A stretch of DNA of 32,221 nt from Octopus sinensis (taxonomy: Eukaryota), in the NCBI RefSeq assembly GCF_006345805.1, contig NW_021829604.1, forward strand, positions 1 through 32,221. The letters are read 5' to 3'. A program made the translations under genes and the position numbers. The notes under the pieces were generated by a model, which was not told the origin of the DNA, did no database searches, and saw nothing but the letters and a program-made list of their open reading frames with translations. Positions 1 through 32,166 of this stretch are shown here, one piece after another (positions within the stretch are counted from its first letter, which is position 1; each line of letters begins with the position of its first letter).

Positions 1-394
1 AGCAACTTAAAGAGATTGCAAACATAAACAAATGCACAGACACCTATGCGCACACATTATCATTCACTTCCAATATCACACATCCTTCATATCACCCATG
101 TCACTGTCACTTGTGTCCCTACTGCCATGCCCCTATCACCCCCACCTCTATCTTTCATCTCTCAATCACTCTTCTTTTTACTCTACTATCTTACTGCTGT
201 GACAAAGATTGGCAGTAAATCTCTTCTCTTCACCATTCTTCCAATGAAACTAGGGATGTTACTGGACCTACCTGAGTCTCTCCCCAACACTCAGCCACTC
301 CTTTTCATATATTTATTACCCTAGATCTCTCACACATCCCAAGATATATGTCAAACCCAGAGATTGAGGGGAAACTTTAGTTTCGACAAGGACA

Positions 395-575
395 TGGCGG
401 TCGTCTCTAGTGATGGTGCCATAAGATGCACCTAGTGCACATTGTGCAGTGGTTGGTGTCAGGAAGAGCATCCAGCTGTGGAAAGATAACCAGAAAATGT
501 AAATTCAGGCAAGATATTCTTGGAACCATCCAACCCATTCTAGCATGGAAAGTGGGGGTAAAATGATGATCATCA
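395..575 (+). mobile_element. Degraded 3' end of an RTE-type LINE/SINE-tail repeat
   Basis: GGAAGAGCATCCAGCTGTGGAAA...CCATCCAACCCATTCTAGCATGGAAAGTGG...ATGATGATC is a diverged copy of the younger element at 26863-27112, which ends in (GAT)n. Confidence 0.6.
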
Positions 576-1869
576 TACATACATACAGATGTATGGATGT
601 ATAAATATACATATGTGCATCCTTGTCTATATATTATACACATTCATTCATATATATGTATGCATGTGTATATAAATACATCTACAATTAGATTAAAGTC
701 TAATTATTATGAGGGGTTTTGTAGGTTTTTCTTCCCCAAAATAAACCAAGTAGAATGGCACAAATGAAATGTAAACATTAATTCCAATTTAATTTTACAA
801 TAGAAATATTTGCAATTATCTGCTTTTCTCTTTATAAACTTTGTTGTCAACAACAACAGCAATAACAACAATATTCTTATCCAGCTTTTCTCCAATATTT
901 TCTAATCCACCTCATTAAACCCCCAATACTTCATAATAAACTACACCAAGTTATAACTCCTCACCGCACACAAAACAAAACACGCTTCACCTGCCAAACC
1001 CCTTTTTCATACAAACACATCTTTCTCATTGCTACCCAAACATTGTCCCTTATATTAAAGATAATTAAGATGAACCTACCTTCCATTAATTGGGCTTATT
1101 CATTAACCAATCTTTATTAATCTCAATCAGCAACAAATAATAACGATCCTCTCAACATGCTGTCTATCAGTGTGATTATATGAAAGCCCATCTTTGGATA
1201 AGCTTTCCGAGTTAATCAATGTTGTGTATGATAATTGTGTGGATTATATTGAAATGTCGAGAGATTTACAGCATTTATCAGGTTAAGAACAGTTTCATCT
1301 CCAGCTTTATTGGTATCTGTTAATCCAGGTAAATATGATGGAAACCAAGCCAACCATGACTGTCCCATCATTAGTAATACTTGTATCTGACAAATGTCTA
1401 TGAAACATAATAAATCTATGTTTTGCTAATTGTTCCATGTTAACGAAGTTTGAATATGATTGCTGTGTGTTGGGACATAATATAGCATGTACACCAATTA
1501 AAGTTAATTTTCTCTACAGCTTAGAGTGTCTCGTATAGAGTGCTTTTAGAGCAGGGGAATCTCTTTGACTAATTATCGTTAAATAAATCTAAGCCACACA
1601 TGACTTTTCTTTGTGATGTTGAGAGCAAATATCATTTCCAGTGAAAATTATTTCTATAATATTTCGACTCCATGTAATTAATGAAACTTGTCAATACATC
1701 TTAGAATAGATTGTAATAAGTTGTTTAAATATTAATTAGACAAGATTAATTCACTGACAGAAATACATAAATGTTTTGTTTGTGTTTTTCAAATGATGAA
1801 GCAAACATCATCTCCCTGAAACTTTAATATTTTCACAAAGCTAAATGTTTTCCTTATATTTCTTTACAG

Positions 1870-4800
1870 ATTCACTATGGAAGACCAGACTGAAAATACT
1901 AGGGTTAGTTCAGAGAGAGAATCAGCAGTGAAGGCCATATCTGGAGACAAAGAAAGCACAAAAGAAACTGAAAAACAAATAGTTGCTAAAATACAGAGGA
2001 TTCGTCTTCAATATGATCGCTGCATGATGTTTATGGAGCATATAGTTAAGGAGAGCAAACATTATGAAAGTCTGGGGTTAAGTGCCAATTGTATTTTAGA
2101 AAAGGTCAAAGAGAGACTTGGAATTTTGCTGAAATATACTAAAGAACAGAATATTTCTATTGAGCAGGACCTCGAATGGTTTCAACAAAGACTCTTTGAC
2201 ATTTATGTCACCAGCAATCCATACAGATGGAAGACCATTCAGATACCAAAAATAACCAAAAATAAATTTCGGCCTCTTCAGCCTGTTGTGACTAGAGAAG
2301 CAAATATCAAGGAATCTGGAGAAGAATTTGAAGAAATCCCAATAATATCCAATATTGTCATCATAGAGGAGGGAGTGATGACATATTCCCACCATTGCAA
2401 GATAATAAGTTTAGTAACAAGAGACAGTGACAGAATTGATGTCCATTGTCCATCTTCTGTGACCAGTTTCACAAGAATCAGTGAAGACATGGTTCTGGCA
2501 ACCCTCCCCCTTCCAAGAAATGATTCTTATTATCAGCCCCAAAACCTTCAAGATCAAAAGGATAAAGTTTGGGTTATATATGGTGAGTTACTTGGAAGAT
2601 TCTACACTTATAGGTGTAGAAATGTTTGGTAAAACAGTTTACCAATTTGATTGGGAGGATAACACTATTAACTATCAATTTATTACCAAAGAAACCCCAA
2701 CAGATATTGCTGTAGGGGTCCAGAATATACTTGTAATTACATTCGCCAGCATCAACAGAGTAATCTGTTACAAACTGGATGGCCAACAATTATGGGAGGT
2801 AGAGACCCATTCTCTGCACCTCCCAAGTAAAATCTCTCTGTACCAAAATTATTTCTATGTCCTCCAGGGACAAATAATTTATAGGATTTCAGCTAAAGGT
2901 GGTGTAACAAGGAGGGACATAGGCAGGAAATGCCGCTCTATTTCTGTTGGTAAAGATACCATTTTGGTTACAGATTATTGCGGCAAACCACATGGTATTC
3001 AAATGAATAAAGACTTTTGGCCCAAACTCTCATACAACCACCAGCTACATACCCCCAGTTTAAAAGACTATATTGATATTGAGGATTGCTACAACATTAC
3101 AAATATTCTACCTATGTCTACATCTTCTATATTAATAATTTACAAAAACAAGAAAGCTAAATTATTCACTGATAATGGGGAAAATTAACCAAAATAATTC
3201 AGTTTCCTTGAGCTTCCTTCTTTCTGTTGTAGAATAAACGCAAACAGATTCCTGGTATTTTATTGTGAAATGAAAGGGTTTCAGTATATCACCTGTCCTG
3301 AACTAAGAAAAGGCCCTTTAATGAAAGTCCATACTGATTACATGAAAATATGTCATATTGTATCAAATAAGTGTCTGGCTGTGACCACCACTGAAAACAA
3401 AAGCGAGGTCCATATCCTCTTGATCAACAAAGATAAAGTTGACATTATAGAAAGAATTTCTCTGGGACATTATGATGTCAGCATTGCTGCAACTCCAATT
3501 AATTTTGTAGTCGTAGATGGAAACGAAAATAAAATGGTATTTTATTCCACATGTGGTGAAGAACTTTTTCAAAAATACCTTCCATTCTATGGCTACCCTC
3601 ATCACATCTACTCTGATAATGTTTATTTCTATGTCCTCTTCAGGAGACACTCTATTCTCAGATGTTACGATCTATATGGACAAATGAAATGGCAGTGGGA
3701 ACTGCCTTTCCCTGTTCACCCTCACATTGCTGTTTTCCAAGGAACTCTTTATGTCCCGGACACTCAACTCAACAGGGTTCTTCTTTACAAGTATCAAGAC
3801 CGTCTTCTGGCTGTTGTTTACCCACCAAAAATCCTTATATCAGAAATCTAAATCTACGACTCAAAGAAAAGGAGAATGACCAAAAACTTGTCATTGGTGA
3901 AATATGTAATCTGTCCAATGGACAGTTGGTGGTGTCTGACATCAAGCATGATTGCTTGTTGTACATTTCTGAGGAAGGAGACATTGTGTCCAGATTATCT
4001 CTGCCATCTACAGCCACAGATATATGTCGATGGGATTCTGATCATATAGGGGTCACATTACCCCTACAGAAACAATTAAGGGTCATCGGAAACCTATCAA
4101 AGACAGTGAGAAGTGTATCATTAAGGCAGCCTTATGTACGGATGTGTAAGATGGGTGAAGTGAAATTATTGTGATAAACCATCACATTTAGACATTTTAG
4201 CCATCAATTATTATAATCAAATTGAAGTAATTAAGACAATTAATATCCCTGTTTTTGTAAAATCATTATCAATAGACAAGAAAACAGAAAAGCTATTAAT
4301 TGTTACTAGGGGAAAACTTTTCAGTACAACACTAGAATAGGTGGTGGTGGTCATGGCGGTCGTCAGATGGTCCCCAGTGTTTTAATGTCTCAAGTGAAAC
4401 GTCCCCTCAGTCTCCAAGGTGGATCTATTGACCAAACGTCTGTTTATCTGATAGACAGAAACCGTATGTTTGCCATAAACGATCAGAATTTGTTGGTTAA
4501 TGATCTCGTTACTAATAATCAACTTAATTATTATATCGACCTGGTGGATGTATTTTCCAGACACATTTCTCTCAGTGAAATGTTGTCTTCCATTTTATAT
4601 CTTCAGGACCTGACAGTTTCTGATAAAGCCAGACATATTCCTCTTCCTGAACATTTGGGAGACAAAGAACCAGCGGAGATTAATCATTTGGTTCTTACAG
4701 AAAATAATCTGATTGCAGGATGTGACTGGGAGAATGGAAACATTAAGATATTCACATTGGATGGTCACCTATTGGATTCAATCAAAGTGAATGTTTATGG

Positions 4801-7162
4801 AGATATTAAAATGTGTCGATGGCAGTCAAACACATTGGTCATTACGATGAGGGATGCTGAAGATGAAAAATACCAACTGTTGACATTAAAAGTGGAATTT
4901 CCATTGTCGTTGGTAATTTACCAAACGAGAAATAAATATAATTGTGTGGCTTCTTTATCAAACAATCAACTGGTTTTTAGTGAACGGAGACATGTAAGAC
5001 ATTTGCATTTTGTTGATATTGATGAAATACATTCGAGTGTGAAGGAAATAAAAAAAATAGACATACCTGAACCATTAATATGGAGAACAGAAGATGGAAA
5101 TTATCCTGATACAATCCGGGATATTAAAGTTACTGATGAAGATGTCATCATTGTCTTCAACTGGAGATTCGTCATTTTCTTCAACAGTGGTGGTCAATAT
5201 TTACATTCAGTCAGACACTACATGGAGTATTATTTTAATGATGATGACAGGATGACAATTGATGACAGTTTTTTGTACATTTATGGTGAGTGGGAGAAAT
5301 GTTTACGTTCATCTGAATATCCAAACATTTTGTGTTTGACCCAGAATGGGGAATACAAGAGAATATTTTTAAATAAAAGAATTTACAAAGGTGGAGTATA
5401 TTTCTCCAGTATAGACTGTAAAGGACCAAGGTTTGTTGGAAGCCCAAATGGAGAAGAGAGAATGAATTGTATGTTGAAGGGTTGTTTATGGTGAATCGAG
5501 ACAGCTTCCCGGTTGCTCGTTTACAAACAGACGAATGTCCTGTTCAAGTAAAAGATTTTGATGTCTCTGAGGAAGGAAAGACAGTGGTGTGTGAAAAAGC
5601 CAATAATGGAAATGTTAAAATATTCGATGAAGACGGCCAGTTGCTATGTCACAGAAATGTTGCAAGTTTAGTTGGTGGGTGTGGTTTAACACAAGAATCA
5701 CACATAATGGCCACGGTTCCTAAAAGGAAAGAAATATTTCAACTGAATGGAGAAGATTTGCAGACATCTCAAATTTGGTCAGTCTCATCCCTTATGGTGT
5801 AATAGGGAAAAGTGGTGGGTATTTACTGGTGTGTACATAATGAATTGATTGAATGTCATTGCATAAAGATTGATGGGGACCAAGTGAACATTCTGGAATC
5901 TGTGTCGTTATTAAACCTTGATTCTGGTCTTCGTTTCCCTTCCATTACATCTGAAACAATAAGGAAATTTCAGTAATGAATTAATTAATAAATTGGAATA
6001 CAGAGGAGGAGATGGAGATGGAGGAGGAAGAGAAGAGGTAAATCAGGTGAAATATTGGCAAAGGTAGATTAAAGGTGAGATGTGGTAATTACATAGCGGA
6101 GATTAATAATTCAGGAATTGATGAAATATCAGTGAGGAGACTTCCATATAGGACAGCAATGGTCCCTTTTTCCATTCCTGCATTCGGGGAACTGTTGATT
6201 ATGATTTGAGGGACATTAGGGACCGGAACAGTAAACTAATTAAGTTAGATGAGAATGTGAGTGTGTTGATGTTTCGAGAAAGTGTCACATTAATCAGAAC
6301 AACAACAACAACAGTGGACATACTTCAACATAAACAACAACAACGACCACCACTGGACATATGTCGGTGGACAGAGGAATGTTCATTGTTGCCTTTGGGA
6401 GAGAAATGAGGGTCTTCAACAGGGATCTCCGTCGTTTAAAACCATCAGAACTGAGAAATACTACAACAGGATTATAAATACAACGACAATCAACTCGTGT
6501 GTGGTGGTCATTATATTAGAGACATAACTCAAGAAGAGAGAGACGAGAAATACGAAAGAAGAAGGTACAACAACAAGGATTACTATTATTGCAAAGACCC
6601 CGACATCTTTGACCCTTATTATGTGGATGTGGTTGATATCAAAGATGGGAAATGTAAAGATGAATTGTGTCGTGGGGAGATGAGGAGATGTGGAAGGTTG
6701 GAGGGACATGAAGGGGTGGAAGATGTGGGAGTCACATCTTTTGGTGATGTTGTTGTTTTGAGGAGGGAGGTGAAGAATAAGAAGGGGTCTGGATGGGATG
6801 TTTTGAGTTTTGTGGAATGGTTCAGGGAAAAGTCTTTGGTGAGGAGGATAGGAATAAAAGAAAGAAGGTTTTATGATCTGAGATATTATATTCTAAGACC
6901 TCGTCTGACCATAATTGGTGAATGTGTTTATATAACAGATTCAAGAAACAATATTTACGAAATACCTCGGCATATTGAAGAGGAAACATCTGAAGATGAT
7001 GAAATCCTGAGATTAAAAGTTAATCCAAAATATTTACTCCTCAGAGGGGATGATAATGAAGTCTTTGAAGTTCTTGGTTTGGATGTTTCAGACAATTCTT
7101 TGATGGTTTTTGGAATTATTCCTGGACGTCAATCTTTTGCTTTCTTTTATTTTGACAAATAA
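1870..7162 (+). CDS. Large single-exon protein (~1,760 aa once reframed): N-terminal helical/coiled-coil segment plus ~6 tandem NHL/YWTD-like beta-propeller domains (TRIM-NHL-like C-terminal module); interrupted by ~16 frameshifts in this assembly
   Basis: Splice acceptor TTTCCTTATATTTCTTTACAG ends at 1869 and the frame is open into the ATG at 1877. ORFs 1877-2632, 2481-3188, 3270-3851, 3662-4174, 4367-5494, 5467-5802, 6206-6409 and 6497-7162, plus unlisted bridging frames, join by +/-1 shifts into one continuous beta-strand-rich sequence. Recurrent blade motifs: TPTDIAVG, ATDICRWDSDHIGVTLP, KMCRWQSNTLVIT, LDICRWTEECFIVAF, NGNIKIFTLDG/NGNVKIFDEDG. Stop TAA at 7160-7162. Family assignment is by eye. 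Confidence 0.75.
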
Positions 7163-7163
7163 A
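7158..7163 (+). promoter_or_regulatory. Candidate polyadenylation signal AATAAA overlapping the stop codon
   Basis: AATAAA at 7158-7163; ATTAAA follows ~15 nt downstream, then U-rich sequence. AT-rich context makes chance occurrence possible. Confidence 0.35.
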
Positions 7164-7309
7164 TATTTCCAGAAATATTAAATTTCAATCTTCTTCTTCT
7201 TCTTCTTATTGTTGTTGTTGTTGTAAATGGCTTCACCCGGGAATCGAACCTGCATCGCATACATTGCATTCTATGCACTAACACTTATTGTTGTAACATT
7301 CCTCAACAC

Positions 7310-7422
7310 ACTTTCTTTGTGTGTGTGTGTATATTTATATACAGTATACGTACATGTGTTTATATATATTACACACATTTTAGGAATGTATGTATAGAAA
7401 TAAGGTTATAAGTATGTATGTT

Positions 7423-7483
<61 letters not shown>

Positions 7484-7485
7484 GC
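7310..7485. repeat. (TG)n/(TA)n microsatellite region
   Basis: Direct reading; long pure (TA)n at ~7433-7481. Confidence 0.9.
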
Positions 7486-7559
7486 ATAGGCATGTATGTA
7501 TAGGAATGTCTGGTCCGAAACCAGAGACTTTCATAATCATTGATTCTCCATTAAAAGGC

Positions 7560-7665
7560 AGACGACCACCGCCACCACCACCACCACCACCACCACCACC
7601 ACCGCCGCCGTCGCCTCCACCATCACCATCGTCATCATCCTCATCATCGTCATCGTCGTCATCAG
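7560..7665. repeat. (CCA)n/(TCA)n/(TCG)n compound trinucleotide repeat
   Basis: Direct reading. Confidence 0.9.
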
Positions 7666-7834
7666 CGTTGTGTGTGCGTGTGTGCAGTCTGCATCTGACA
7701 GTTTTTAACGTTTAATAAGAATAGATTGTTGTTGTTGTTGTTGCAGTGACATTCCAACTGCACACACGCACAAACATTGCCTTTCGTCCTCGTAGGGTTG
7801 TTGTTGTTGTTGTTGCTGTTGGGGGTTCATAAAA

Positions 7835-8200
7835 AAAGAGAAGGACACTTTAAGAAGCATTCAGTAAAAGCTTTCCCATAGCTGGTCATTTTTCATGCTA
7901 GAAATAGAAACCACTTTATTTTTCATATAAATTTTGAAGGACAGCTAAGATTCTTTTATAAATAAAATTGGCCAGTATAAGGTCTCATTTCATGCTAGAA
8001 AGAGCCACCTAAACCTTCACATTTCTATTTCATCACAAATAAAAATCGAAGGACAATTTTCAAAGCATCCATGTCAAATATTGTCCTATAGATGGCCTAA
8101 CATCATACTAGAAATTATAGCCAAATACTCTGAAATGTATATCGTTTTTCATCGAAAAAGTGAAGGACACTTTAAGAAGCAACTCTAAAGATATTGTCCT
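7835..8200. repeat. Degenerate ~100-110 bp tandem repeat (about 4 units)
   Basis: GAAGGACA at ~7840, 7937, 8049 and 8163, each but the last followed by CAT(G/A)CTAGAAA at ~7894, 7991 and 8104. Confidence 0.55.
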
Positions 8201-8339
8201 GTGGCGGTTTAAGTGTAAAATATTATAAAAGTATGCATCTATGAGTTTTATGTGTTTAAAAAACATAGCAAAGACATGTGTGTATATGTAGGTATATATA
8301 AATATACATGTGTATAAATGTTCCTTGATGATGTCTATG

Positions 8340-8935
8340 CTTCTTCCCTAATAACTTGCAGAGAAATGGATATTTTTCATGGAATTTCCTACAAATATGC
8401 TTCAGATGGTGTAGATTCCGATTCTGTGAGGATTTATTGGAAAAACTTATTTTCTTTCATAACAAAGGCGAATCTTGTGAATTTTCTAAAACTGCTTTTC
8501 TCACCCAGGGACAAACGGTTTTCACAATGAATTCCGATTTAATCGGAATCTAAACCATCTGAAGAATATTTGTAGAAAATTTCATTAAAAAATATTTAAT
8601 TTTGCGAAAGTTGTGAGGAAGCAAATTCGGCATAACTACAGATATATACCCCACCGACTTTGTTTCCTCATAACTTGCAGAAAAATGGATACTTTTTGAA
8701 TGAAACTTTCAATAAATAATCGCTTAGATCCTGTAGATTGAGTTTTTGTAAGGATTTGTTGGAAAAACATTTTTTGAAGGGTTGCGGAAAGGAGTTTTGC
8801 AAAATTCACACAACCAGACATTTTCCCTCCTCATAAATTTCAGGAAAATGGGTATTTTTGAATGAAATTTTATAGAAATAACTTTCAAACGATGTAGATT
8901 ACGATTAAAAAGAAATTTGTTGGCAAAATGTTTTA
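8340..8935. repeat. Degenerate direct and inverted ~100-bp repeats (foldback/MITE-like remnant)
   Basis: Unit CCTCATAACTTGCAGAAAAATGGATATTTTTGAATGAAA...GTAGATT at ~8347, 8666 and 8829; an inverted copy at ~8540-8622. Confidence 0.55.
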
Positions 8936-9769
8936 TAAGGGTTCGAGGGAAAATGTGTGTGATTTAAGGGAGATTTGGCTGTTGTTTCTAGCACACCACC
9001 ATCCTTGTCTTCTTTTTTTCTCATTCAATGTTTTGATGTTTTTCAATATTTTTCACTCAGAAACACATTTATGTTATAAAAAAATAAAAAGAATATTTTA
9101 AAAATCTCTGATTATTTTTAGCCCCACTTCCTGGTCCCCGAATCTTCCTCCAAACCTAATTCAGAAACGCGCGTCCATGGACGACCAGATATTGATTGAT
9201 TTTCGTTGCTTTACTCCCTGCTTGTGTGAATTGTCTTCAAGTATTTTGGTTTCTCTGGGAGACCCTTTTTAAAGTAGAAGAAATAATTAAGATTTTTGGC
9301 TGCTATTTCTAAACTTCGGTGTGTGGTGAAGCAAATCTTTGCTGAACCCTTTTATTAGTAAATACTGTATCCTTAGATGAACATTTCCGTAATGTAACAC
9401 TAAAATTTTCTAGTCTTATAAAATATCGACTGAGAATACGACACAGTTCAACATAACAGTATATTTAAGAAGCAGGTCTTGCGACTTTTTAATGACGTAA
9501 ATGTGTAAGTAAATTGTCTGTTAATTAAAATGATTGTAACAAAGATATTTACCAGAGTTGATAGACAAGGTTTCAATTACAGCCTGAAGTCTCTTTGTCT
9601 CAGGAATATCATGTGAGTTTGTTGAAGGTGCGGCAAAGAGCGTGACTTCTGCAACTGGTGATGTAAAGCTTATTCACAAAGCAGGACCTAGTTTCTACAT
9701 AAGTGGACGATACATTGTCAGATGTCCGTATGTGTGTGTGTGTGTGTAGCGGTGTTTAAATGTGTATAA

Positions 9770-10197
9770 GGCGGCGAGCTGGCAGAAACGTTAGCACGCC
9801 AGGCGAAATGCGTAGCCGTATTTCGTTTGCCGTTGCGTTCTGAGTTCAAATTCCGCCGAGGTCGACTTTGCCTTTCATCCTTTCGGGGTCGATAAATTAA
9901 GTACCAGTTACGCACTGGGGTCGATGTAATCGACTTAATCCGTTTGTCTGTCCTTGTTTGTCCCCTCTGTGTTTAGCCCCTTGTGGGTAGTAAAGAAATA
10001 GGTATTTCGTCTGCTGTTGCGTTCTGAGTTCAAATTCCGCAGAGGTCGACTTTGCCTTTCATCCTTTCGGGATCGATAAATTAAGTACCAGTTACGCACT
10101 GGGGTCGATGTAATCGACTTAATCCGTTTGTCTGCCCTTGTTTGTCCCCTCTGTGTTTGTCCCCTCTGTGTTTAGCCCCTTGTGGGTAATAAAGAAA
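9770..10197 (+). mobile_element. tRNA-derived SINE (family A), dimeric
   Basis: Head GGCGGCGAGCTGGCAGAAACGTTAG with A-box-like TGGCAGAAACG and B-box-like GAGTTCAAATTCC; second unit joined at AAAGAAATAG|GTATTTCGTC (10001/10002). Confidence 0.9.
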
Positions 10198-10977
10198 CGG
10201 ATTAGACAAGGAAAGCTTGCCAGGACAGAAGGATAACTAGTGAAGTAGTGAAGGTAATTGAACTTGAATCCGGTTATAAATAACCGAGAATACTTGGGGC
10301 AGATGGAATTAAACACAACGATAGGAAAGAAAAGACAAAGAAAGTGTACCTGCGGCGAGAGAGAAAAATATTGGCTTTTGTGTCAGAACCATAATTTCAA
10401 CAATAAACTCGCACGCAGTCGCAGTAGTTCGGTATGGCGCTGGGATCCTGAAGTGGACAGAGGAGGAGTTAAACGTGTTGGACAAAAAGACGAGAAAGCG
10501 CTTAATGATGCATGGAGTCCACCATCCATGTGCAGACACTGATTCCATATACATGAAGAGAGAAAATGGAGGAAAGGGACTGATAAGTGTGGAAGACTTG
10601 CGTGTGTATCGAACTCGATACCTATTCCAGTGTAAGGAACCCTTGCAAGTGTCCGTTAGGGATGAAGGAGTATTGAGGGCAGAGAAAAAAGGGGGAAAAA
10701 CAAGGGAATAAGTACAAAAAGAACATGAAGAAGCATTAGTCTAAAAGGGACTACATGATCAATTCCATGTAGCTACATGTTAAGTTGCTGGAAAACATGG
10801 GTGGGATTGGCTGGAGAAATTAACTCTAAAAAAGGAACTGGGAGCGCAAGACCAAGCTTTGGCCATGAATTGGAGGTTCAGGCTTAGAATTGGGCAAATG
10901 TCTGGGCCGCATCTGTAACAGAGGGGACGAAACCATTGCCCATATTGCAAACGAATGCCTTAGACTTGCTCAAAACC
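10198..10977 (+). mobile_element. R4/Dong-clade (RLE) non-LTR retrotransposon, RT thumb to CCHC region, degraded and 5'-truncated
   Basis: Translates to AVAVVRYGAGILKWTEEELNVLDKKTRKRLMMHGVHHPCADTDSIYMKRENGGKGLISVED...DETIAHIANECLRLAQN, typical of R4/Dong ORF; multiple frameshifts. Confidence 0.85.
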
Positions 10978-11575
10978 TATTTCTTTCCTACCCACAAGGG
11001 GCTAAACACAGAGGGGACAAATAAGGACAGACATAGGTATTAAGTCGATTACATCTACCCCAGTGCATAACTGGTACTTAATTTATCGACCCCGAAAGGA
11101 TGAAAGGCAAAGTCGACCTCGGCGGAATTTGAACTCAGAACGTAACGGCAGACGAAATACCTATTTCTTTATTACCCACAAGGGGCTAAACATAGAGGGG
11201 AAAAACAAGGACAGACAAAGGGATTAAGTCGATTATATCGACCCCAGTGCATAACTGGTACTTAATTTATCGACCCCGAAAGGATGAAAAGCAAAGTCGA
11301 CCTCGGTGGAATTTGAACTCAGAACGTAACGGCAGACGAAATACCTATTTCTTTATTACCCACATGAGGCTAAACATAGAGGGGAAAAACAAGGACAGAC
11401 ATAGGTATTAGTCGATTAGATCGACCCCAGTGCGTAACTGGTACTTAATTTATCGACCCCGAAAGGATGAAAGGCAAAGTCGACCTCGGTGGAATTTGAA
11501 CTCAGAACGTAACGGCAGACGAAATACTGCAAAGCATTTCGTCCAGCGTGCTAACGTTTCTGCCAGCTCGCCGCC
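10978..11575 (-). mobile_element. SINE family A trimer inserted into the R4/Dong element
   Basis: Three units on the minus strand, head at 11575; 18-bp TSD TTAGACTTGCTCAAAACC at 10960-10977 and 11576-11593. Confidence 0.9.
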
Positions 11576-14790: not shown

Positions 14791-15280
14791 GCTCACCGCC
14801 TTATGGCGACATAAATACGATGCTGGGAAGTTAAAGAATGTAAAACAGAATAATTGTTTCAGATCAGAAAGGAGGACATTTTGTCATTGATACCAAGAGG
14901 AAATGCTGCCATTGTTTGTGCCAAGCAAAACCACTTAGCAATCCCAGTTGAGCCCTTCACTCACGTTGATCGGATATACGAAACAGTTTCAAGCAATTGA
15001 CCGATAATTTAGGGTATCGGATGGAGGCATAAGTGGTTGAGCAGCTAAAAGATTATGCAAGAGATTAAATCCGAAGAGTTACTTGGAGCAGCCGTCAGAG
15101 AGGTAAGACGTGTTTTTGTTCGCTTCTTTTAAGTTGTCATAATGTTGATTTTGAAGACTGGAGCAAAAGACAAAGTCAGTATGGTATTGACTGGTAATCA
15201 AAGAGATCGATAATTAGTCATTTCAAATTGCAATTTGTGTTTATAGCATCGTTTCTGATTCTTCATTACTTCTTTAGTTT

Positions 15281-16041
15281 GTCCCCTCTATGTTTAGCCC
15301 CTTGTGGGTAGTAAAGAAATAGGTATTTCGTCTGCCGTTATGTTCTGAGTTCAAATTCCGCCGAGGTCGACTTTGCCTTTCATCCTTTCGAGGTCGATTA
15401 AATAAGTACCAGTAAAGCACTGGGGTCGATGTAATCGACTTAATCCGTTTGTCTGTCCTTGTTTGTCCCCTCTGTGTTTAGCCCCTTGTGGGTAGTAAAG
15501 AAACATGTATTTCGTCTGCTGTTATGTTCTGAGTTCAAATTCCGCCGAGGTCGACTTTGCCTTTCATCCCTTCGAGGTCGATTAAATAAGTACCAGTTAT
15601 GCATTGGGGTCGATGTAATCGACTTAATCCGTTTGTCTGTCCTTGTTTGTCCCCTCTGTATGTAGCCCCTTGTGGGTAGTAAAGAAATAGGTATTTTGTA
15701 TGCTGTTATGTTCTGAGTTCAAATTCCGCCGAGGTCGACTTTGCCTTTCATCCTTTCGAGGTCGATTAAATAAGTACCAGTTATGCACTGGGATCGATGT
15801 AATCGACTTAATCCGTTTGTCTGTCCTTGTTTGTCCCTTCTATGTGTAGCCCCTTGTGGGTAGTAAAGAAATAGGTATTTCATCTGTCTTCATGCTGAGT
15901 TCAAATACTGCCGAAGTCGGCTTTGCCTTTTATTCTTTCAGGGTCGATAAACCAAGTACCAGTTGCGTACGGGGGTCGATCTAATTGACAGGTCCCCTCC
16001 CCACAAAATCCAGGCCTTGTGCCTAGAGTAGAGAGGATTAT
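15281..16041 (+). mobile_element. Headless SINE tandem array (tail fragment + ~4 units; last unit has a different tail)
   Basis: Units of ~183 bp starting at ~15323, 15508, 15690 and 15873; last tail is GGCCTTGTGCCTAGAGTAGAGAGGATTA; 11-bp direct repeat TTCTTTAGTTT at 15270-15280 and 16042-16052. Confidence 0.85.
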
Positions 16042-18937: not shown

Positions 18938-18985
<48 letters not shown>

Positions 18986-19016
18986 CATCATCATCATTAT
19001 TACTATTATTATTATT

Positions 19017-19102
<86 letters not shown>
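18938..19102. repeat. (ATT)n/(ATC)n microsatellite
   Basis: Direct reading. Confidence 0.95.
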
Positions 19103-19104
<2 letters not shown>

Positions 19105-19317: not shown

Positions 19318-20428
19318 TCATCATCATCATCATCACCACCACCACCACTACCACCACCACCACCACCACCACCGCCACCACCGTCGTCATCATCATCATC
19401 ACCACCACCACAACCACCACCACCACCACTACCACCACCATCGTCATCATCATCATCACCACCACCTCAACAACCACCACTACCACCACCATCGTCATCA
19501 TCATCACCACCACCACAACCACCACCACCACCACTACCACCACCATCGTCATCATCATCATCACCACCACCTCAACAACCACCACTACCACCACCACCAC
19601 CATCGTCATCATCATCACCACCACCACAACCACCACCACCACCACTACCACCACCATCGTCATCATCATCATCACCACCACCTCAACAACCACCACTACC
19701 ACCACCATCGTCATCATCATCACCACCACCACAACCACCACCACCACCACTACCACCACCATCGTCATCATCATCATCACCACCACCTCAACAACCACCA
19801 CTACCACCACCATCGTCATCATCATCACCACCACCACACCCCACCACCACCACCACCACCACCACCACAACCACCACCATCGTCATCATCATCATCACCA
19901 CCACCACAACCACCACCACCACCACTACCACCACCATCGTCATCATCATCACCACCACCACAACCACCACCACCACCACTACCACCACCATCGTCATCAT
20001 CATCACCACCACCACAACCACCACCACCACCACTACCACCACCATCGTCATCATCATCACCACCACCACCACTACCACCACCATCGTCATCATCATCACA
20101 CCACCACCACAACAACCACCACCACCATCGTCATCATCATCACCACCACCACCACTACCACCACCATCGTCATCATCACCACCACCACCACCACACCACC
20201 ACCACCACACCACCACCATCGTCATCATCATCATCACCACCACCACAACCACCACCACCACCACGTTCGTCATCATCATCATCACCACCACCACAACCAC
20301 CACCACCACCACCACCACAACCACCACCATCGTCATCATCATCATTACCACCACCACAACCACCACCACCACCACTACCACCACGTTCGTCATCATCATC
20401 ACCACCACCACCACAACCACCACCATCG

Positions 20429-20460
<32 letters not shown>
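19318..20460. repeat. 1.15-kb compound (CCA)n/(TCA)n minisatellite with ~51-54 bp units
   Basis: Repeats of CCACCACCATCGTCATCATCATCA with CAA/CTA variants; source of the Pro/Ser/Thr/Val/Met ORFs on both strands. Confidence 0.95.
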
Positions 20461-20474
20461 TGTTATAAAAAACT

Positions 20475-21000
20475 TTCGGATGGTTCTTAATTACCGATTG
20501 TTCTTTACTTGAAATCAGACAATAACAAATCACCAAAGGTGTTAAGTGGTGCCTTTCTCCCGTGACTCAAAGAGACCAACACTCTCCTTAGAATGTGAGC
20601 TATACCCAACAATGCTGACTTCTGGATCACCTCGAGCCTGACAGTAGCCCCAATATTCTTAATATGTTTTTCAAAGCCCTTGAAAACTGCCCCTAATGCT
20701 CTAATTACCCCCTGTATCACCATTACTTTCCTTATGCCCCATAATTTTCCTATCTCATCTCCACAGTAGCTAGTATTTCTCACTCTTTTCTGTTTCCTTA
20801 CATTTCACCCTTTAATCGCCTGCTATTGCTACATCGATTATCTTTGCTTCTTTTTCATCTTTATGGATGAGCACAATATCTAGTCGTCTCGCCTCAATGA
20901 CTTGGTCGCAATGCATATTAAAATCCCAGAGTATTTTGTAATGTTCGTTTTCTATTACCCCCTCTAACTTGTGTTCATACCATTGTTCGGCTCTCTCGAG
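20475..21000 (-). mobile_element. R4/Dong-clade LINE RLE domain fragment
   Basis: WYEHKLEGVIENEHYKILWDFNMHCDQVIEARRLDIVLIHKDEKEAKIIDVAIAGD...DEIGKLWGIRKV...IQKSALLGIAHILRRVL. Confidence 0.88.
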
Positions 21001-21013
21001 GTTGTTGTTGTTG

Positions 21014-21078
<65 letters not shown>

Positions 21079-21632
21079 GAGTGAGAGAGCAGTGCATGCC
21101 ATCAAAGTGACACTGGGGTAAAATATACGAAGCCTAGTATACCCATCATGACTACCCGTCTGATAAGGGTACACCAGGCACATGCATCACAACCATATGT
21201 GCGCGACATGGTGATCCCATATCAAGATAAACAGCGCATGACCTTGCAGGTGGGGCCTAGTTAGAATTTTCTTTTGGTCGAATAATCCATCCCGCTCAAA
21301 AGGTCCCTGAATAAGGATTGTTTAAGGCTGTTGAACGAACCACCCATGTTTCCAAAAGTGAAATATCCAAACCTCTAAGAATTCCTTTCAACACATGGCT
21401 ATGATGCTCCCCCACTACTTCTGCTTGTGATCAGAGATGCACATATCGTCAGCCACTAAGGGACATGCTCAACTGGTTATGGTCAAACAACTGACAAGCA
21501 AATCTGTGGTATTGAGCAGAATATTTGCTGTAGCCCATCTTTTATACCAAGACAAAACAATGTACATGATAACACTTCCAATCAGTTAAGATCAGAAGCC
21601 ATGAGAGCCACTGCCTGGTACTGCATCAGGAC

Positions 21633-21637
<5 letters not shown>
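21079..21637. mobile_element. ~560-bp non-coding interspersed element embedded in (ATT)n
   Basis: Unique-looking sequence bracketed exactly by (TTA)n 21001-21078 and (ATT)n 21637-21757; no ORF. Resembles a high-copy octopus repeat from memory (unverified). Confidence 0.5.
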
Positions 21638-21685
<48 letters not shown>

Positions 21686-21687
21686 TA

Positions 21688-21741
<54 letters not shown>

Positions 21742-21756
21742 TATTATTATTATTAT

Positions 21757-22167
21757 TCAGTAGTTTTATTTTTATAGCGTGCTTTCACTTCACTACCGAG
21801 CGCAGCTCTGTGTGCCTTGGGTATGTGCTGTGATTTGTTGTGATGCTCTGATGGTTATTGTATGGAAAGTGTTCTGCGTAGGATGTGTGCAGTGCCTAGT
21901 AGTGCAATTTTCTGTATGTTATATGTGTTTGTAAGTCCTGGTGTTTTTGTTATGTATTTGTCTGAATATTTTTTTATCATGCCTAATGCACCTACTATGA
22001 TAGGAATTGTTTCTGTTTTCAGATTCCACATTCTGGTTACCTCTATTTCCAGGTCTTTGTATTTTGAGAGTTTCTCCATTTCTTTTAGAGACACGTTGTT
22101 ATCAGCCGGTATTGATACATCAATTAGAAAGCATTTATTTTTCTTCATGATCTCTGACAACTATATC

Positions 22168-22245: not shown

Positions 22246-23580
22246 GTTTTCGTTATTGCCCACATAGGCCTACATAGAACATACAGGGACGCAAATACAA
22301 ATGCACAAACGGACACAAACGGAAGGGTTTACCAAGCAAACATAAAAGAATAACAAAACAATTATCAATAAAATTAAACAAATACAATTCCCCAACAGGG
22401 GGGGGGGACTTCCAAAGGAAAACTGTGCAAACCCCACAGAAAATCACGGTTTCCCTGACCACTTAGGCAAGTACTTCCGCTCCCTTTTACTCCACTCAGG
22501 AGCGCATGCTCAGAGCTGGCCCCATCCCGTTCACACGAACCATGCTTGTCACTCTCGTTCCCCTTTCAATAAATTTGCTAGAAAGGAGCATCTCCCTCTC
22601 CACTCTGATCCGTCTCTTCAAGTGGAACCTCAAAAAGTTGATCAGAGATCTGCCAGAGAGGGAAGTGCTGGTCTTCGGTCCTTTCAGTCTTGCCCATCAC
22701 ACAGCCTCTTCCGTCGTGGCCACCCGGCAGATGAAAGCTGCCCGGCCTTCCTGACCAAAAGAAGAGGGCGGAGCAATCTTAACAGTAGTCTCGGTTGATA
22801 GTCGGATCCGTGCGACACGCGACAGTAAGTGCTCATCATAAATCCACACATCAGAAATTGTCGGACACTGGATGAGTGCGAGCAGAACGGCTTCATCGCT
22901 CCGCACACATCTCGGGCAATTCCGACTGACAGCACTTCCGTGCCTGTGGAGTTTATACTGAACTGACAACGCTCCCCGGTAGCAGGCCAAAGATTTTTGG
23001 AAGTTATCCAGAGGCCCCGGGCCAAAAGTCCTCCGGAAAAGATCGGTCAGTTGTTCCTCGTTGAAGTCCGGGGCCTCCTTAACGACGTCGTCACACCTAT
23101 CCTCCACTAAACTCCTACAGACCGTAAAGGTAGAATTTCTAGCCACTCGCCTCCCTCGGTCTCTCTGCTTGACCCAGGGTTGCATTTCCGTTAAGGAGAC
23201 GAATTGAGGAAAAGTGCGTCTAACTAAGGGCAACCACCCCTGCTAATTATCAAAGAAACGCTGGAGATGCTGCAGCCCCAGCGCCTGCCTGCGCATCAGC
23301 AACCATGGCATGCCTAGCCCTCCGTTCAGCAGCTGTTGACAAGTAGATAGACCGCCTGACAAGAGGAACGCGCCCCTTCCACAGAAAGCGAAAGAGTATA
23401 CACTCCAGCATCTTCAGGCGTGACTTGAGGCAAAGTACGACAGTCAGACGGCATTCAATGACGGATGCGACGTACATATTCGTCACATCCGCCCGACCTT
23501 TCAGGGACATTTTCATCTCAGTCCATTTCTGGGTGAGTTTGGCTACTTAGATCATTACCTTGTCCAAGTTCTTATCCACC
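22246..23580 (-). mobile_element. Tx1/L1-clade LINE ORF2 C-terminal part and 3' UTR, 5'-truncated, degraded
   Basis: SLKGRADVTNMYVASVI...FRFLWKGRVPLVRRSI and zinc-knuckle CPRCVRSDEAVLLALIQCP typical of L1/Tx1 ORF2; 3' UTR ends in (AAT)n at 22245. Confidence 0.85.
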
Positions 23581-27859: not shown

Positions 27860-28680
27860 CATCGTTTTAGACACCATGTCACCTGCCGCAAAACCTTCTT
27901 CGTCCGTAGCAAATCGACGACCTCATAAAGGATGTTTGAGCGGCCCCAGAGGTGAGATCTCTGTATACAAGGTGTTCTGGCAACTCGAAAGTCAATGGTT
28001 CCAACGATGTGGACGGCCATATGTGGGCATACGTTTGCGTGCAACAACAACACTCGTTTTGACAATGGACAGGCGGCGAGCTGGCAGAAACGTTAGCACG
28101 CCGGGCGAAATGCGTAGCCGTATTTCGTCTACCGTTACGTTCTGAGTTCAAATTCCGCCGAGGTCGACTTTGCCTTTCATCCTTTCGGGGGTCGATTAAA
28201 TAAGTACCAGTTACGCACTGGGATCGATGTAATCGACTTAATCCGTTTGTCTGTCCTTGTTTGTCTCCTCTGTGTTTAGCCCCTTGTGGGTAGAAAAGAA
28301 ATAGGTATTTCGTCTGCCGTTACGTTCTGAGTTCAAATTCCGCCGAGGTCGACTTTGCCTTTCATCTCCTTTCGGGGTCGATAAATTAAGTACCAGTTAC
28401 GCACTGGGGTCGATGTAATCGACTTAATCCGTTTGTCTGTCCTTGTTTGTCCACTCTATGTTTAGCCCCTTGTTGGTAGTAAAGAAGCAGTTTTGACAAT
28501 GGATTTCAGCATTTGATGCAAAGTGCTAATTTCCGTTTGCTGGCCAGCATTTCAATGAGGCCTACGCAGGTGACTATGAAGGCCTTTCCCAGGTAATGTT
28601 CCAGTATGGCCCTGCTGCGTTGCTTAAAAAACGGTCAACATAAACTTTTCTGTGGATTCTGAATTTCTTTTCTGTTGGCA
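27860..28680 (-). mobile_element. Degraded mariner transposase remnant, split by a SINE dimer
   Basis: Rejoined minus strand gives KFMLTVF...ILEHYLGK...SKRVLLLHANVCPHMAVHIVGT...TFELPEHLVY.RDL...GRRF, matching mariner KVMLTVFWD...LLHDNARPH...HPPYSPDL...GRRF, with stops and frameshifts. Confidence 0.75.
28072..28486 (+). mobile_element. SINE family A dimer
   Basis: 14-bp TSD GTTTTGACAATGGA at 28056-28069 and 28490-28503; internal junction AAAGAAATAG|GTATTTCGTC at ~28304. Confidence 0.92.
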
Positions 28681-29934: not shown

Positions 29935-30060
29935 TTCTTCTTCTTCTTCTTCTTCTTTCTTCTCTTCTTCTTCCTCTTCTTCTTCTTCTCTTCTTCTTCT
30001 TCTTCTTCTCTCTTCTTCTTCTTCTTCTTCTTCTTTCTTTTCTTCTTCTTCTTCTTATTA

Positions 30061-30095
<35 letters not shown>

Positions 30096-30384
30096 CATTG
30101 TTACTGTTATTTGTTATTATTATTAATAATATTATTATTATTATTAATAATAATATAATTATTATTATTATTATTAATTAATATTATTATTATTAATTAT
30201 TAATATTATTGTTACTATTATTTATTATTATTATTATTATTATTAATTATTATTATTATTATTATTGTTATAATTATTATTAGTCATTATTATTAATTAT
30301 TATTATTATTATTAATTATTATTATTATTATTAATTATCATTATTATTATTAATTATTATTATTATTAATTATCATTATTATTA

Positions 30385-30427
<43 letters not shown>

Positions 30428-30440
30428 TATTATTATTCAT
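29935..30440. repeat. (TTC)n followed by (ATT)n microsatellite tract
   Basis: Direct reading. Confidence 0.95.
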
Positions 30441-30738
30441 TTTTCTTTTTATTCTTTAACATGTATCCTTTTTATCCACCTCATCACCATTTTCTCCTCT
30501 TGCTCCAGCTCTTCCTCCACCACCTCCTCTTCCTCTCCCTCCTCCTCGACTGCCGAGACAAGCCATTCCTTTCATTTCGGAGTCAATAAATGAGTACCAG
30601 TTTCACACTGGACCCAATGTAGTGGATTTGCCCCTACCCCGGAATTGCTGTCCTTGTACTGAAATTTTAAACCGATATTTAATATTTTATCTCAAATCTG
30701 TTCTACCCCTTTTTTATAAACTCATCTTTATGTTAAAG

Positions 30739-31902: not shown

Positions 31903-32006
31903 TACTACTACTACTATTACTACTACTACTACTACTAGTTCTACTACTACTACTACAGTTCTACTACTACTACTACAAGTTCTACAACTACTACTAGTAG
32001 TAGTTT

Positions 32007-32042
<36 letters not shown>

Positions 32043-32112
32043 CTACAACTACTACTACTACTAGTTAGTACTAATACTACTACTACTACTACTACTATTA
32101 CTACTACTAGTT

Positions 32113-32166
<54 letters not shown>
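31903..32166. repeat. (CTA)n microsatellite
   Basis: Direct reading. Confidence 0.95.

What the first reader, a model, noticed from the sequence alone, without database searches (positions are those of the whole stretch)
1870..7162. Hidden ~1,760-aa protein made of about six tandem NHL-like beta-propellers in one giant exon
Seen: eight listed ORFs plus unlisted bridging frames stitch into one reading frame behind a clean splice acceptor, with blade motifs recurring roughly every 260-300 aa (DICRW/MCRW three times; NGN(I/V)KIFxxDG twice). Known: molluscs have expanded TRIM/B-box-NHL-type proteins, usually with one C-terminal propeller. Inference: a helical N-terminus followed by a chain of ~6 divergent propellers is an unusual architecture and could be a lineage-specific multivalent recognition protein (innate immunity or RNA binding). 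The acceptor is phase 2 and open, so upstream exons outside or unrecognised in this window may add RING/B-box or death-fold domains.
Basis: partly seen in the sequence, partly recalled or inferred. Interest (0 to 1): 0.75.

Follow-up and report, generated by a model that had tools for sequence, protein, structure and literature searches.

The report
Frame-broken octopus six-propeller gene copy
This stretch is one copy, interrupted by 18 tiny frameshifts, of an octopus-only gene family whose ~1,780-residue proteins have a helical head and six NHL-like beta-propellers in a row; the family sits in databases as "uncharacterized protein" and I found no study of it.

Summary
Window 1877-7162 (+) is homologous end to end with a multi-copy Octopus gene family whose intact members are single uninterrupted ORFs of about 1,783 codons, for example O. 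bimaculoides LOC106868082. There is a helical N-terminus followed by six homologous units of about 220-320 aa. AlphaFold2 models fold these units as beta-propellers, and family profiles hit solved TRIM-NHL domains. First, the window copy is not one reading frame. It runs through 16 frame segments separated by 18 frameshifting indels: 17 small deletions and one insertion, 12 of them within about 1 kb. Second, no upstream RING or B-box exon exists. RefSeq models start at the ATG at 1877, seven bases after the conserved acceptor. The frame path contains no nonsense substitution, although 4-5 are expected under neutral decay. Together with the clustered 1-bp deletions, this makes uncorrected long-read consensus errors about as likely as true pseudogenisation. 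An exhaustive profile search found the family only in octopods (three Octopus species and Argonauta). The only outside matches are two weak ones, a bivalve RING/B-box/propeller protein and an unnamed fragment with a sub-threshold NHL match. Function is untested. I infer an intracellular multivalent binding scaffold that evolves by gene birth and death.

The parts
1851..1869 (+). Polypyrimidine tract and AG splice acceptor (ttccttatatttctttacag); the exon starts at 1870
   Evidence: Sequence read. The same tract precedes the ATG of the intact O. bimaculoides gene in L007. O. vulgaris gene models splice a few residues onto this acceptor.
1877..1879 (+). Start codon, homologous to the start of RefSeq models of intact family members
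   Evidence: MEDQTENT compared with MEDHTRNV and MEDQTENTL....
1973..2209 (+). N-terminal helical region, preceded by a basic hydrophilic tail; no signal peptide
   Evidence: The AF2 model of P0042 has helices at 78-160, pLDDT 50-69. Window coordinates were placed by peptide mapping.
1877..2506 (+). Frame segment 1 (frame 2, 210 codons), ended by a +1 insertion in a C run at 2506
2306..3077 (+). Propeller unit 1
   Evidence: AF2: 23 strands, pLDDT about 80. hhalign U1-U2 87%. Mapped.
3078..3856 (+). Propeller unit 2. Contains the -2 (3182) and -1 (3202) deletions with two stops between them, and the -1 at 3801
   Evidence: AF2: 24 strands. hhalign U2-U3 91%, U2-U4 94.5%. Indels.
3857..4651 (+). 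Propeller unit 3 (NGQLVVSD...DICRW), with a variable Gly/Ser-rich loop; -8 at 4165, -1 at 4316
   Evidence: This unit matches the bivalve RING/B-box/propeller protein P0079.
4652..5514 (+). Propeller unit 4 (NGNIKIFTLDG...MCRW); lies mostly in the longest open piece, 4317-5445; -1 at 5445
   Evidence: NHL blade alignment to TRIM71.
5515..6173 (+). Propeller unit 5 (NGNVKIFDEDG), carrying seven small deletions (5780, 5804, 5957, 5968, 6030, 6053, plus 6191 at its boundary)
   Evidence: hhalign U4-U5 89%. NHL blade alignment to TRIM71. The AF2 model of this unit is low confidence. Indels.
6174..7159 (+). Propeller unit 6 (DICRW ... VYITDSRNNIYEIP), with -1 deletions at 6381, 6437 and 6471; open in frame 2 from 6472 to the end
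   Evidence: AF2 of P0009 residues 310-651, pLDDT 80-95, all-beta. Foldseek returns beta-propellers. hhalign U4-U6 97%, U3-U6 95.5%.
7160..7162 (+). TAA stop, homologous to the stop of family members (...FAFFYFDK*)
110..1876 (+). Upstream non-coding part of the duplicated unit, 93-98% identical to paralogous loci
   Evidence: blastn against L001 and L002.
7163..8460 (+). Downstream non-coding part of the duplicated unit, including TA/TG and CAC microsatellites; similarity to L001 continues in patches to about 9150
   Evidence: No terminal direct or inverted repeats bound the unit.

Best explanation
Window 1870-7162 is the single coding exon of one member of an octopod-specific, multi-copy gene family.

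What the family encodes: intact members make an intracellular protein of about 1,780 aa. It has a basic tail, a helical region of about 80 aa, and then six homologous six-bladed beta-propeller units of the NHL type.

State of this copy: as written it cannot make that protein, because 18 tiny indels break the frame. The original frame has still been kept free of nonsense substitutions. So the copy was under selection until very recently or still is. I rate uncorrected long-read consensus deletions as slightly more likely than genuine decay for most of the breaks.

Mechanism (inferred, not shown): each propeller offers one NHL-like binding face. A chain of six, possibly oligomerised through the helical head, would act as a multivalent cytoplasmic binder or scaffold for a repeated or polymeric ligand, either protein or RNA. 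The family diversifies by gene birth and death.
For: Identity and architecture (shown):
- Colinear homology with 57 or more Octopus proteins, many of them 1,690-1,903 aa long.
- Intact single-ORF copies exist: L007 3001-8352 and L006 8902-14250.
- Six units are linked pairwise at 87-97% hhalign probability.
- AF2 shows helices, then 23-24-strand all-beta units, and a confident C-terminal propeller.
- Foldseek best hits are propeller arrays (LRP2, LRP4, DDB1, IFT-A) and the TRIM71 NHL domain.
- With the diverse whole-length profile, the top 12 PDB sequence hits are all TRIM-NHL domains, best E 0.0015. The stacked-unit profile hits TRIM2 at 7e-12, TRIM3 at 6e-9 and Brat at 1e-4.
- No signal peptide or transmembrane segment.

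Selection:
- dN/dS is 0.35-0.46 between intact copies.
- Single-copy subfamilies are 91-94% identical between O. vulgaris and O. bimaculoides.

Status of this copy:
- 18 frameshifts, 17 of them deletions, 12 of them within 5445-6472.
- Zero nonsense substitutions in 1,737 codons, against 4.0-5.4 expected (P 0.004-0.017). For window plus L001 plus L002 together, zero against 10.8 expected (P 0.0002).
- The O. vulgaris reference, which holds the closest paralogs, is an ONT R9.4.1 assembly polished with linked short reads (PMC10700109).
Against: - No Pfam model, NHL included, reaches its threshold on any window piece or family member. The best is 18.5 bits against a 20-bit cut-off.
- The stacked-unit profile also matches hyper-repetitive WD40 proteins, so the blade signal is partly generic.
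- AF2 confidence is only moderate (mean pLDDT 55-63), and unit 5 is not resolved.
- dN/dS within the window/L001/L002 subclade is 0.67-0.91, close to neutral.
- The 8-bp and 2-bp deletions are less typical of consensus errors. Only about half of the 1-bp deletions lie in short homopolymers.
- The source assembly of the window is unknown.
- There is no expression, localisation or ligand evidence of any kind.
Confidence: 0.6

Rival explanations
1. Genuine pseudogene. The copy was disabled in the genome, and the 18 indels are real mutations that accumulated under neutral decay.
For: - dN/dS of window against L001 and L002 is 0.67-0.84.
- Window-specific substitutions have a normal transition/transversion ratio and about twice the branch length of L001 or L002.
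- Small deletions also occur in the 3' flank, 3 in 1.1 kb.
- Many family gene models in three species are fragments.
- L003, L004 and L005 carry stops or shifts.
Against: - No nonsense substitution along the original frame, against 4-5 expected (P 0.004-0.017).
- There are 12 one-to-two-base deletions but only about 21 unique substitutions in about 1 kb. That indel:substitution ratio of about 0.5 is far above the 0.06 seen in the flanks.
- There are 17 deletions against 1 insertion.
Confidence: 0.4
2. The units are WD40-type or another propeller class rather than NHL-type. The NHL-like motifs are then generic blade features.
For: - The stacked-unit profile gives its best scores to WD40 repeat proteins 2ymu and the WRAP-T designs.
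- Many Foldseek hits are WD40 proteins such as EED, Fbw7 and DDB1.
- Weak Pfam hints point to ANAPC4_WD40 and CFAP43 WD40.
Against: - Those WD40 hits are sums over 7-14 near-identical repeats, each individually insignificant.
- All natural-protein sequence hits of the whole-length profile are TRIM-NHL.
- Units have about 24 strands in about 230-250 aa, which means six blades rather than seven.
- The only outside relatives are a bivalve RING/B-box/6-bladed-propeller protein and a fragment with a sub-threshold NHL match.
Confidence: 0.15
3. The 9-kb repeated unit is a mobile element or its cargo, and the long ORF is an element-encoded protein.
For: - Dozens of copies, with both flanks conserved and a common 5' boundary near window 110 in two paralogs.
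- Copies are spread over one 29-Mb chromosome, and some lie on other chromosomes.
Against: - No terminal inverted or direct repeats bound the unit.
- No transposase, reverse transcriptase or integrase similarity.
- Ancient single-copy subfamilies are conserved between species.
- dN/dS of 0.35-0.46 is typical of host genes.
Confidence: 0.04
4. The listed ORFs are several separate small genes rather than one gene.
For: Annotation pipelines have called 262-651-aa fragments at paralogous loci.
Against: Those fragments tile a single colinear 1,783-codon ORF that is uninterrupted in L007 and L006, and nearly so in L001 (one shift) and L003 (one TGA).
Confidence: 0.02

Closest known systems
Uncharacterized Octopus proteins LOC106868082 (O. 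bimaculoides, 1,783 aa), LOC118768466 and LOC115226288 (O. sinensis), and CAI97... 'Hypothetical predicted protein' (O. vulgaris)
   Same: Same family and the same architecture end to end. Identity is 80-91% to the closest members and about 60% to most. All have a single coding exon and the same start and stop.
   Different: Those members are open reading frames. The window copy is broken by 18 small indels.
TRIM-NHL proteins (TRIM71/LIN-41, TRIM2, TRIM3, Drosophila Brat and Thin)
   Same: They share the NHL-type blade signature (DG.hhV.D..N..h.hF...G.hh) and a six-bladed propeller of about 250-280 aa. They are the only natural solved structures hit by the family profiles.
   Different: TRIM-NHL proteins have one propeller behind RING, B-box and coiled-coil domains. 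This family has six propellers and no RING or B-box. The Pfam NHL model stays below threshold.
Expanded molluscan RING/B-box/propeller (TRIM-like) proteins, for example Potamilus streckersoni KAK3588083.1
   Same: This is the named protein among only two non-octopod matches in 1.84 billion representatives (E about 1e-4; the other is an unnamed 169-aa fragment). It aligns to unit 3 (NG.LV..D..N.CLLY...SLP...D.C). It belongs to a lineage-specific expanded family.
   Different: It has a single propeller and carries a B-box, with only a sub-threshold RING match. The similarity is weak.
LDL-receptor-family YWTD propeller arrays (LRP2/megalin, LRP4)
   Same: Chains of six-bladed propellers. These are the best Foldseek E-values for the four-unit model.
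   Different: They are extracellular, with EGF spacers, a signal peptide and a transmembrane anchor. No sequence relationship was shown. TM-scores are low because domain orientations differ.
Intracellular multi-propeller scaffolds (DDB1, IFT-A subunits, Bulli)
   Same: Several propellers in one cytoplasmic polypeptide that serve as interaction platforms.
   Different: They are seven-bladed WD40-type, with two or three propellers, and are ancient single-copy genes.

Membership tests
Octopod six-propeller family (LOC106868082-like) | Colinear homology over the whole ~1,780-aa length | tested here: met
   tblastn and stitched alignment cover L003 positions 90-1781. Identity is 80-91% to P0012, P0013, P0032 and P0033.
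Octopod six-propeller family (LOC106868082-like) | Single coding exon, with the ATG a few bases after a conserved acceptor and a conserved stop | tested here: met
Octopod six-propeller family (LOC106868082-like) | Uninterrupted open reading frame | tested here: not met
   18 frameshifting indels and 16 frame segments. Whether they are real or assembly errors could not be tested.
Octopod six-propeller family (LOC106868082-like) | Six homologous internal units of about 220-320 aa | tested here: met
   hhalign among unit profiles gives 87-97%. The motif period of 257-291 aa is seen in the window itself.
NHL-repeat beta-propeller (Pfam PF01436; TRIM-NHL type) | Match to the Pfam NHL model above its gathering score | tested here: not met
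   No hit for window pieces or for full-length members. The best is P0070 at 18.5 bits against a cut-off of 20.
NHL-repeat beta-propeller (Pfam PF01436; TRIM-NHL type) | Profile-level sequence similarity to solved NHL domains | tested here: met
   Profile A5: the top 12 hits are all TRIM71, Brat, TRIM2, TRIM3 or Thin, best E 0.0015. Profile A6: TRIM2 7e-12, TRIM3 6e-9, Brat 1e-4, although repetitive WD40 designs score higher.
NHL-repeat beta-propeller (Pfam PF01436; TRIM-NHL type) | Six four-stranded blades per domain | tested here: inconclusive
   Units 1 and 2 have 23-24 strands in the AF2 model. Units 3, 4 and 6 are propeller-like but incomplete or carry inserts. Unit 5 is low confidence.
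TRIM / RBCC proteins | N-terminal RING and B-box zinc fingers | tested here: not met
   RefSeq models start at the ATG of the big exon. There are no RING or B-box Pfam hits. The extended models P0015 and P0027 add C2H2 or DUF4371 domains, not RING or B-box.
TRIM / RBCC proteins | Coiled coil preceding the C-terminal domain | tested here: inconclusive
   Four helices are predicted at residues 78-160, with pLDDT only 50-69. No coiled-coil predictor was available.
WD40 repeat proteins | Pfam WD40 match and seven-bladed domains | tested here: not met
   Only sub-threshold ANAPC4_WD40 and CFAP43 hints. Unit size and strand count fit six blades.
Processed pseudogene (retrocopy) | Loss of introns and flanks relative to the parent gene, poly-A tail, random insertion | tested here: not met
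   The intronless CDS is the family norm. The 5' acceptor, about 1.7 kb upstream and at least 1.3 kb downstream are shared with paralogs.
Transposable element | Terminal repeats and element-type enzymes | tested here: not met
   No bounding repeats. No transposase or RT domains in the ORF.

The most novel reading that the evidence does not exclude
Octopods evolved, from the molluscan TRIM-NHL-type repertoire, a new class of cytoplasmic receptor or scaffold. The RING and B-box were lost and the NHL propeller was multiplied six-fold. Two ancient single-copy genes persist, while a third lineage exploded into dozens of fast-evolving copies concentrated on one small chromosome. Those copies are kept open against nonsense mutations despite dN/dS of about 0.8, which would be the signature of a diversifying recognition family (antiviral, anti-transposon or RNA-binding). 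Many 'fragment' and 'pseudogene' members in the ONT-based O. vulgaris reference, this one included, would then be intact genes hidden by assembly errors.
Probability: 0.2. Interest if true: 0.7.

Novelty: new variant of a known kind. Interest (0 to 1): 0.45.

Why it matters
Cephalopod genomes are known for a few lineage-specific expansions, such as protocadherins, C2H2 zinc fingers and GPCRs. My searches of the paper library found no description of this one: neither the twelve LOC identifiers tried nor keyword searches returned a paper on it. The family combines four features:
- an unusual architecture of six NHL-like propellers in one intronless 5.3-kb exon;
- restriction to octopods;
- two deeply conserved single-copy members;
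- one clade amplified to dozens of copies on a single small chromosome.

If the amplified copies are functional, they are candidates for an intracellular recognition system in an animal group whose innate immunity is poorly understood.

There is also a practical point. Frame breaks in this family in long-read octopus assemblies should not be read as pseudogenisation without checking the reads. Current annotations split single genes into several fragment models.

Tried and rejected
- Pfam on all window pieces and on full-length members gave nothing above threshold.
- A single-sequence PDB search found nothing.
- The first word-indexed protein search with the 375-aa ORF found only 11 fragment models and missed the full-length members. 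A profile of stitched paralogs was needed to find them.
- The last word-indexed search, with the propeller of the bivalve protein P0079, returned only P0079 itself. No outside NHL-type family could therefore be built for a profile-profile test.
- An exact look-up of the window's 375-aa ORF in public assemblies found nothing on record, so the source assembly stays unknown.
- Literature searches by twelve LOC identifiers and by keywords found no paper on the family.
- I checked whether the 29-Mb chromosome carrying most copies is the octopus Z chromosome. The Z is described as a large chromosome, so I dropped that idea.
- The C. elegans C45G9.5 structure, the best TM-score for the C-terminal unit, has no informative literature.
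- A transposable-element reading was rejected for lack of terminal repeats and element enzymes.
- The codon-array polarisation was contaminated by out-of-frame stretches and gave an odd transition/transversion ratio. I replaced it with the DNA-alignment counts.


Full report
**What is in the window.** Between 1877 and 7162 on the + strand, no single frame is open. The long open stretches alternate among all three frames. The sequence upstream reads ttccttatatttctttacag|attcactATG. That is a polypyrimidine tract and an AG at 1868-1869, followed seven bases later by the ATG at 1877. None of the nine translated pieces matches a Pfam family or a solved structure on its own. DICRW lies at 4019 and 6356, MCRW at 4811, and NGN(I/V)KIFxxDG at 4733 and 5605. 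They are spaced 257-291 codons apart and occur far more often than in shuffled sequence.

**It belongs to a multi-copy Octopus family.**
- A protein search with the longest ORF found only Octopus vulgaris and O. sinensis fragment models.
- I fetched five paralogous loci from O. vulgaris. The same about 5.3 kb is nearly open elsewhere.
  - L001 has a single 1-bp frameshift.
  - L003 has one frame of 1,782 codons with a single TGA.
  - L002, L004 and L005 have several breaks.
- At the DNA level the duplicated unit runs from about window 110 to 8460-9150, at 93-95% identity. It has no bounding terminal repeats.
- A profile built from stitched paralogs recovered 57 family proteins, all from O. vulgaris, O. 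sinensis or O. bimaculoides and all named 'uncharacterized' or 'hypothetical'. About fifteen of them are full length at 1,690-1,903 aa.
- In O. bimaculoides, LOC106868082 is one uninterrupted ORF of 5,352 nt. In O. vulgaris, P0018 has a 1,783-codon exon.
- RefSeq models start at the ATG homologous to 1877. The O. vulgaris models that extend further only splice a few residues onto the same acceptor. So the acceptor most likely joins a 5' UTR exon, and there is no RING or B-box exon.

**Distribution.** An exhaustive HMMER search of 1.84 billion representative proteins, using a profile of the N-terminal 930 positions, found 26 proteins. Most of those looked up by name, and all those already recovered in earlier searches, are Octopus proteins.
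- One is from Argonauta hians (1,913 aa, with a second 1,925-aa member in its cluster).
- There are two weak outsiders. One is a freshwater-mussel protein with a B-box, a sub-threshold RING match and a weak six-bladed-propeller match (E about 1e-4). The other is a short fragment with a sub-threshold NHL match.
- Within Octopus there are three deep subfamilies, only 29-42% identical to one another. Two are single-copy and 91-94% identical between O. vulgaris and O. bimaculoides. The third is the amplified clade that contains the window.
- At least 35 gene models of the amplified clade lie on one 29-Mb O. vulgaris chromosome, OX597841.1. The copies I fetched sit at 3.1, 6.0, 17.9 and 22.0 Mb.

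**Architecture.**
- Profile-profile comparison of alignment blocks shows six homologous units in register: U1-U2 87%, U2-U3 91%, U2-U4 94.5%, U3-U6 95.5%, U4-U6 97%, U4-U5 89%.
- AlphaFold2 on P0042 (units 1-4, 38-sequence alignment) gives a disordered basic tail and helices at 78-160. All-beta units follow at 200-428 (23 strands), 443-686 (24 strands), 720-930 and 985-1164+, with pLDDT mostly 65-85.
- AlphaFold2 on P0009 (units 5-6) gives a confident all-beta C-terminal domain (pLDDT 80-95) but a poor unit 5.
- Foldseek against the PDB returns propellers only. The four-unit model matches LRP2 and LRP4 YWTD arrays, DDB1 and IFT-A. The C-terminal unit matches IFT-A, Bulli, C. elegans C45G9.5 (best TM-score 0.58), Fbw7, EED and the TRIM71 NHL domain.

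**Propeller class.**
- A whole-length profile that includes the divergent subfamilies and Argonauta puts only TRIM-NHL domains (TRIM71, Brat, TRIM2, TRIM3, Thin) ahead of noise, with best E 0.0015. The alignments fall on the canonical NHL blade.
- A profile made by stacking all six units hits TRIM2 (7e-12), TRIM3 and Brat.
- That stacked profile scores hyper-repetitive WD40 designs even higher, by adding many individually weak repeats.
- The Pfam NHL model itself never reaches its cut-off.

My reading is that these are six-bladed propellers, most probably of the NHL lineage, but formal NHL membership is unproven. No signal peptide or transmembrane segment is present, so I infer an intracellular protein.

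**State of the window copy.**
- A three-way DNA alignment with L001 and L002 gives 18 window-specific frameshifting indels. Seventeen are deletions (fourteen of 1 bp, two of 2 bp, one of 8 bp) and one is a 1-bp insertion. Twelve lie between 5445 and 6472.
- Following the frame across these sites gives 16 segments and 1,737 codons with no stop codon.
- The window branch carries about 104-142 substitutions with a normal transition/transversion ratio. If these were neutral, 4.0-5.4 would be nonsense (P of none 0.004-0.017). For the window, L001 and L002 together, 10.8 are expected and none is seen (P 0.0002).
- dN/dS within this subclade is 0.67-0.91, against 0.35-0.46 between intact copies.
- In the 5445-6472 stretch the ratio of small deletions to substitutions is about 0.5, against about 0.06 in the flanks.
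- The O. vulgaris reference, which holds the nearest paralogs, was assembled from ONT R9.4.1 reads and polished with linked short reads (PMC10700109). Multi-copy regions are where such polishing fails.

I therefore cannot call this a pseudogene with confidence. Uncorrected consensus deletions explain the pattern at least as well. I could not identify the assembly the window comes from.

**Function.** Nothing is known experimentally, and my library searches found no paper on the family. From the anatomy I infer a cytoplasmic multivalent binder. It would present six NHL-like faces on one chain, with a helical head that may oligomerise like the coiled coil of TRIM proteins. It would evolve by gene birth and death, as recognition families do. 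This is inference. The shown facts are the fold class, the repeat number, the taxonomic restriction, the copy number and the selection pattern.

**Verdict.** The gene and its six-fold repeat are real, but the continuous frame is not. The architecture and lineage restriction hold, the upstream RING/B-box idea does not, and the function is untested. The family is already present in databases as uncharacterized proteins, so the window adds one frame-broken member. The architecture itself is an undescribed variant of NHL-type propeller proteins.

Noticed in passing
window 9818-10170, 10975-11527, 15277-15989, 28120-28486, plus single copies near 11.9, 13.0-13.8, 14.6, 25.2-25.5 and 26.2-26.4 kb: A 184-bp SINE-like element (…GTTCTGAGTTCAAATTCCGCCGAGGTCGACTTTGCC…) occurs both dispersed and as short head-to-tail arrays of 2-4 copies. 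The same element is inserted upstream of the paralogs, at L001 5096-5325 and L002 1143-1391.
   Followed up: partly
window 19328-20458: A 1.1-kb CAC/54-bp minisatellite produces the extreme GC skew (-0.6 to -0.7) seen at 19-21 kb. Long TAT/TTA/TAC microsatellites lie at 18938-19103, 21635-21757, 30055-30453 and 31903-32166.
   Followed up: no
window 22700-23233 (-) and 20815-21183 (-): These look like retrotransposon remnants. The first ORF has a weak zf-RVT match (E 6e-4, below the cut-off). The second has no Pfam hit; from my own recollection it resembles the C-terminal tail common to invertebrate non-LTR elements.
   Followed up: partly
window 898-1372: This upstream non-coding stretch is 97.7% identical to paralog L001, which is higher than the coding region at about 94%. 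It may be a conserved promoter or 5' UTR, or a tract of recent gene conversion.
   Followed up: no
L001 9767-9768; L003 10916-10918: Two O. vulgaris paralogs are one lesion away from a full 1,780-codon ORF: a 1-bp deletion in L001 and a TGA at a Trp/Glu position in L003. The annotation splits each into two genes. These may also be assembly errors in the ONT-based reference.
   Followed up: partly
O. vulgaris chromosome OX597841.1 (loci L001, L002, L003, L006): At least 35 gene models of the amplified clade sit on this one 29-Mb chromosome, spread from 3 to 22 Mb rather than in a tight tandem array.
   Followed up: partly
proteins P0015, P0027, P0074/P0087: Some gene models fuse the family ORF to C2H2 zinc fingers, to a DUF4371 transposase-like region, or to an 'E3 ligase MIB2-like' N-terminus. 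These are probably chimeric predictions, but the MIB2 case was not examined.
   Followed up: no
window 4317-4366; L002 about 11063-11173; L005 9731-10000: The loop inside unit 3 is a Gly/Ser-rich low-complexity insert whose length varies widely between paralogs, from a few residues in the window to about 50 serines in L005.
   Followed up: no
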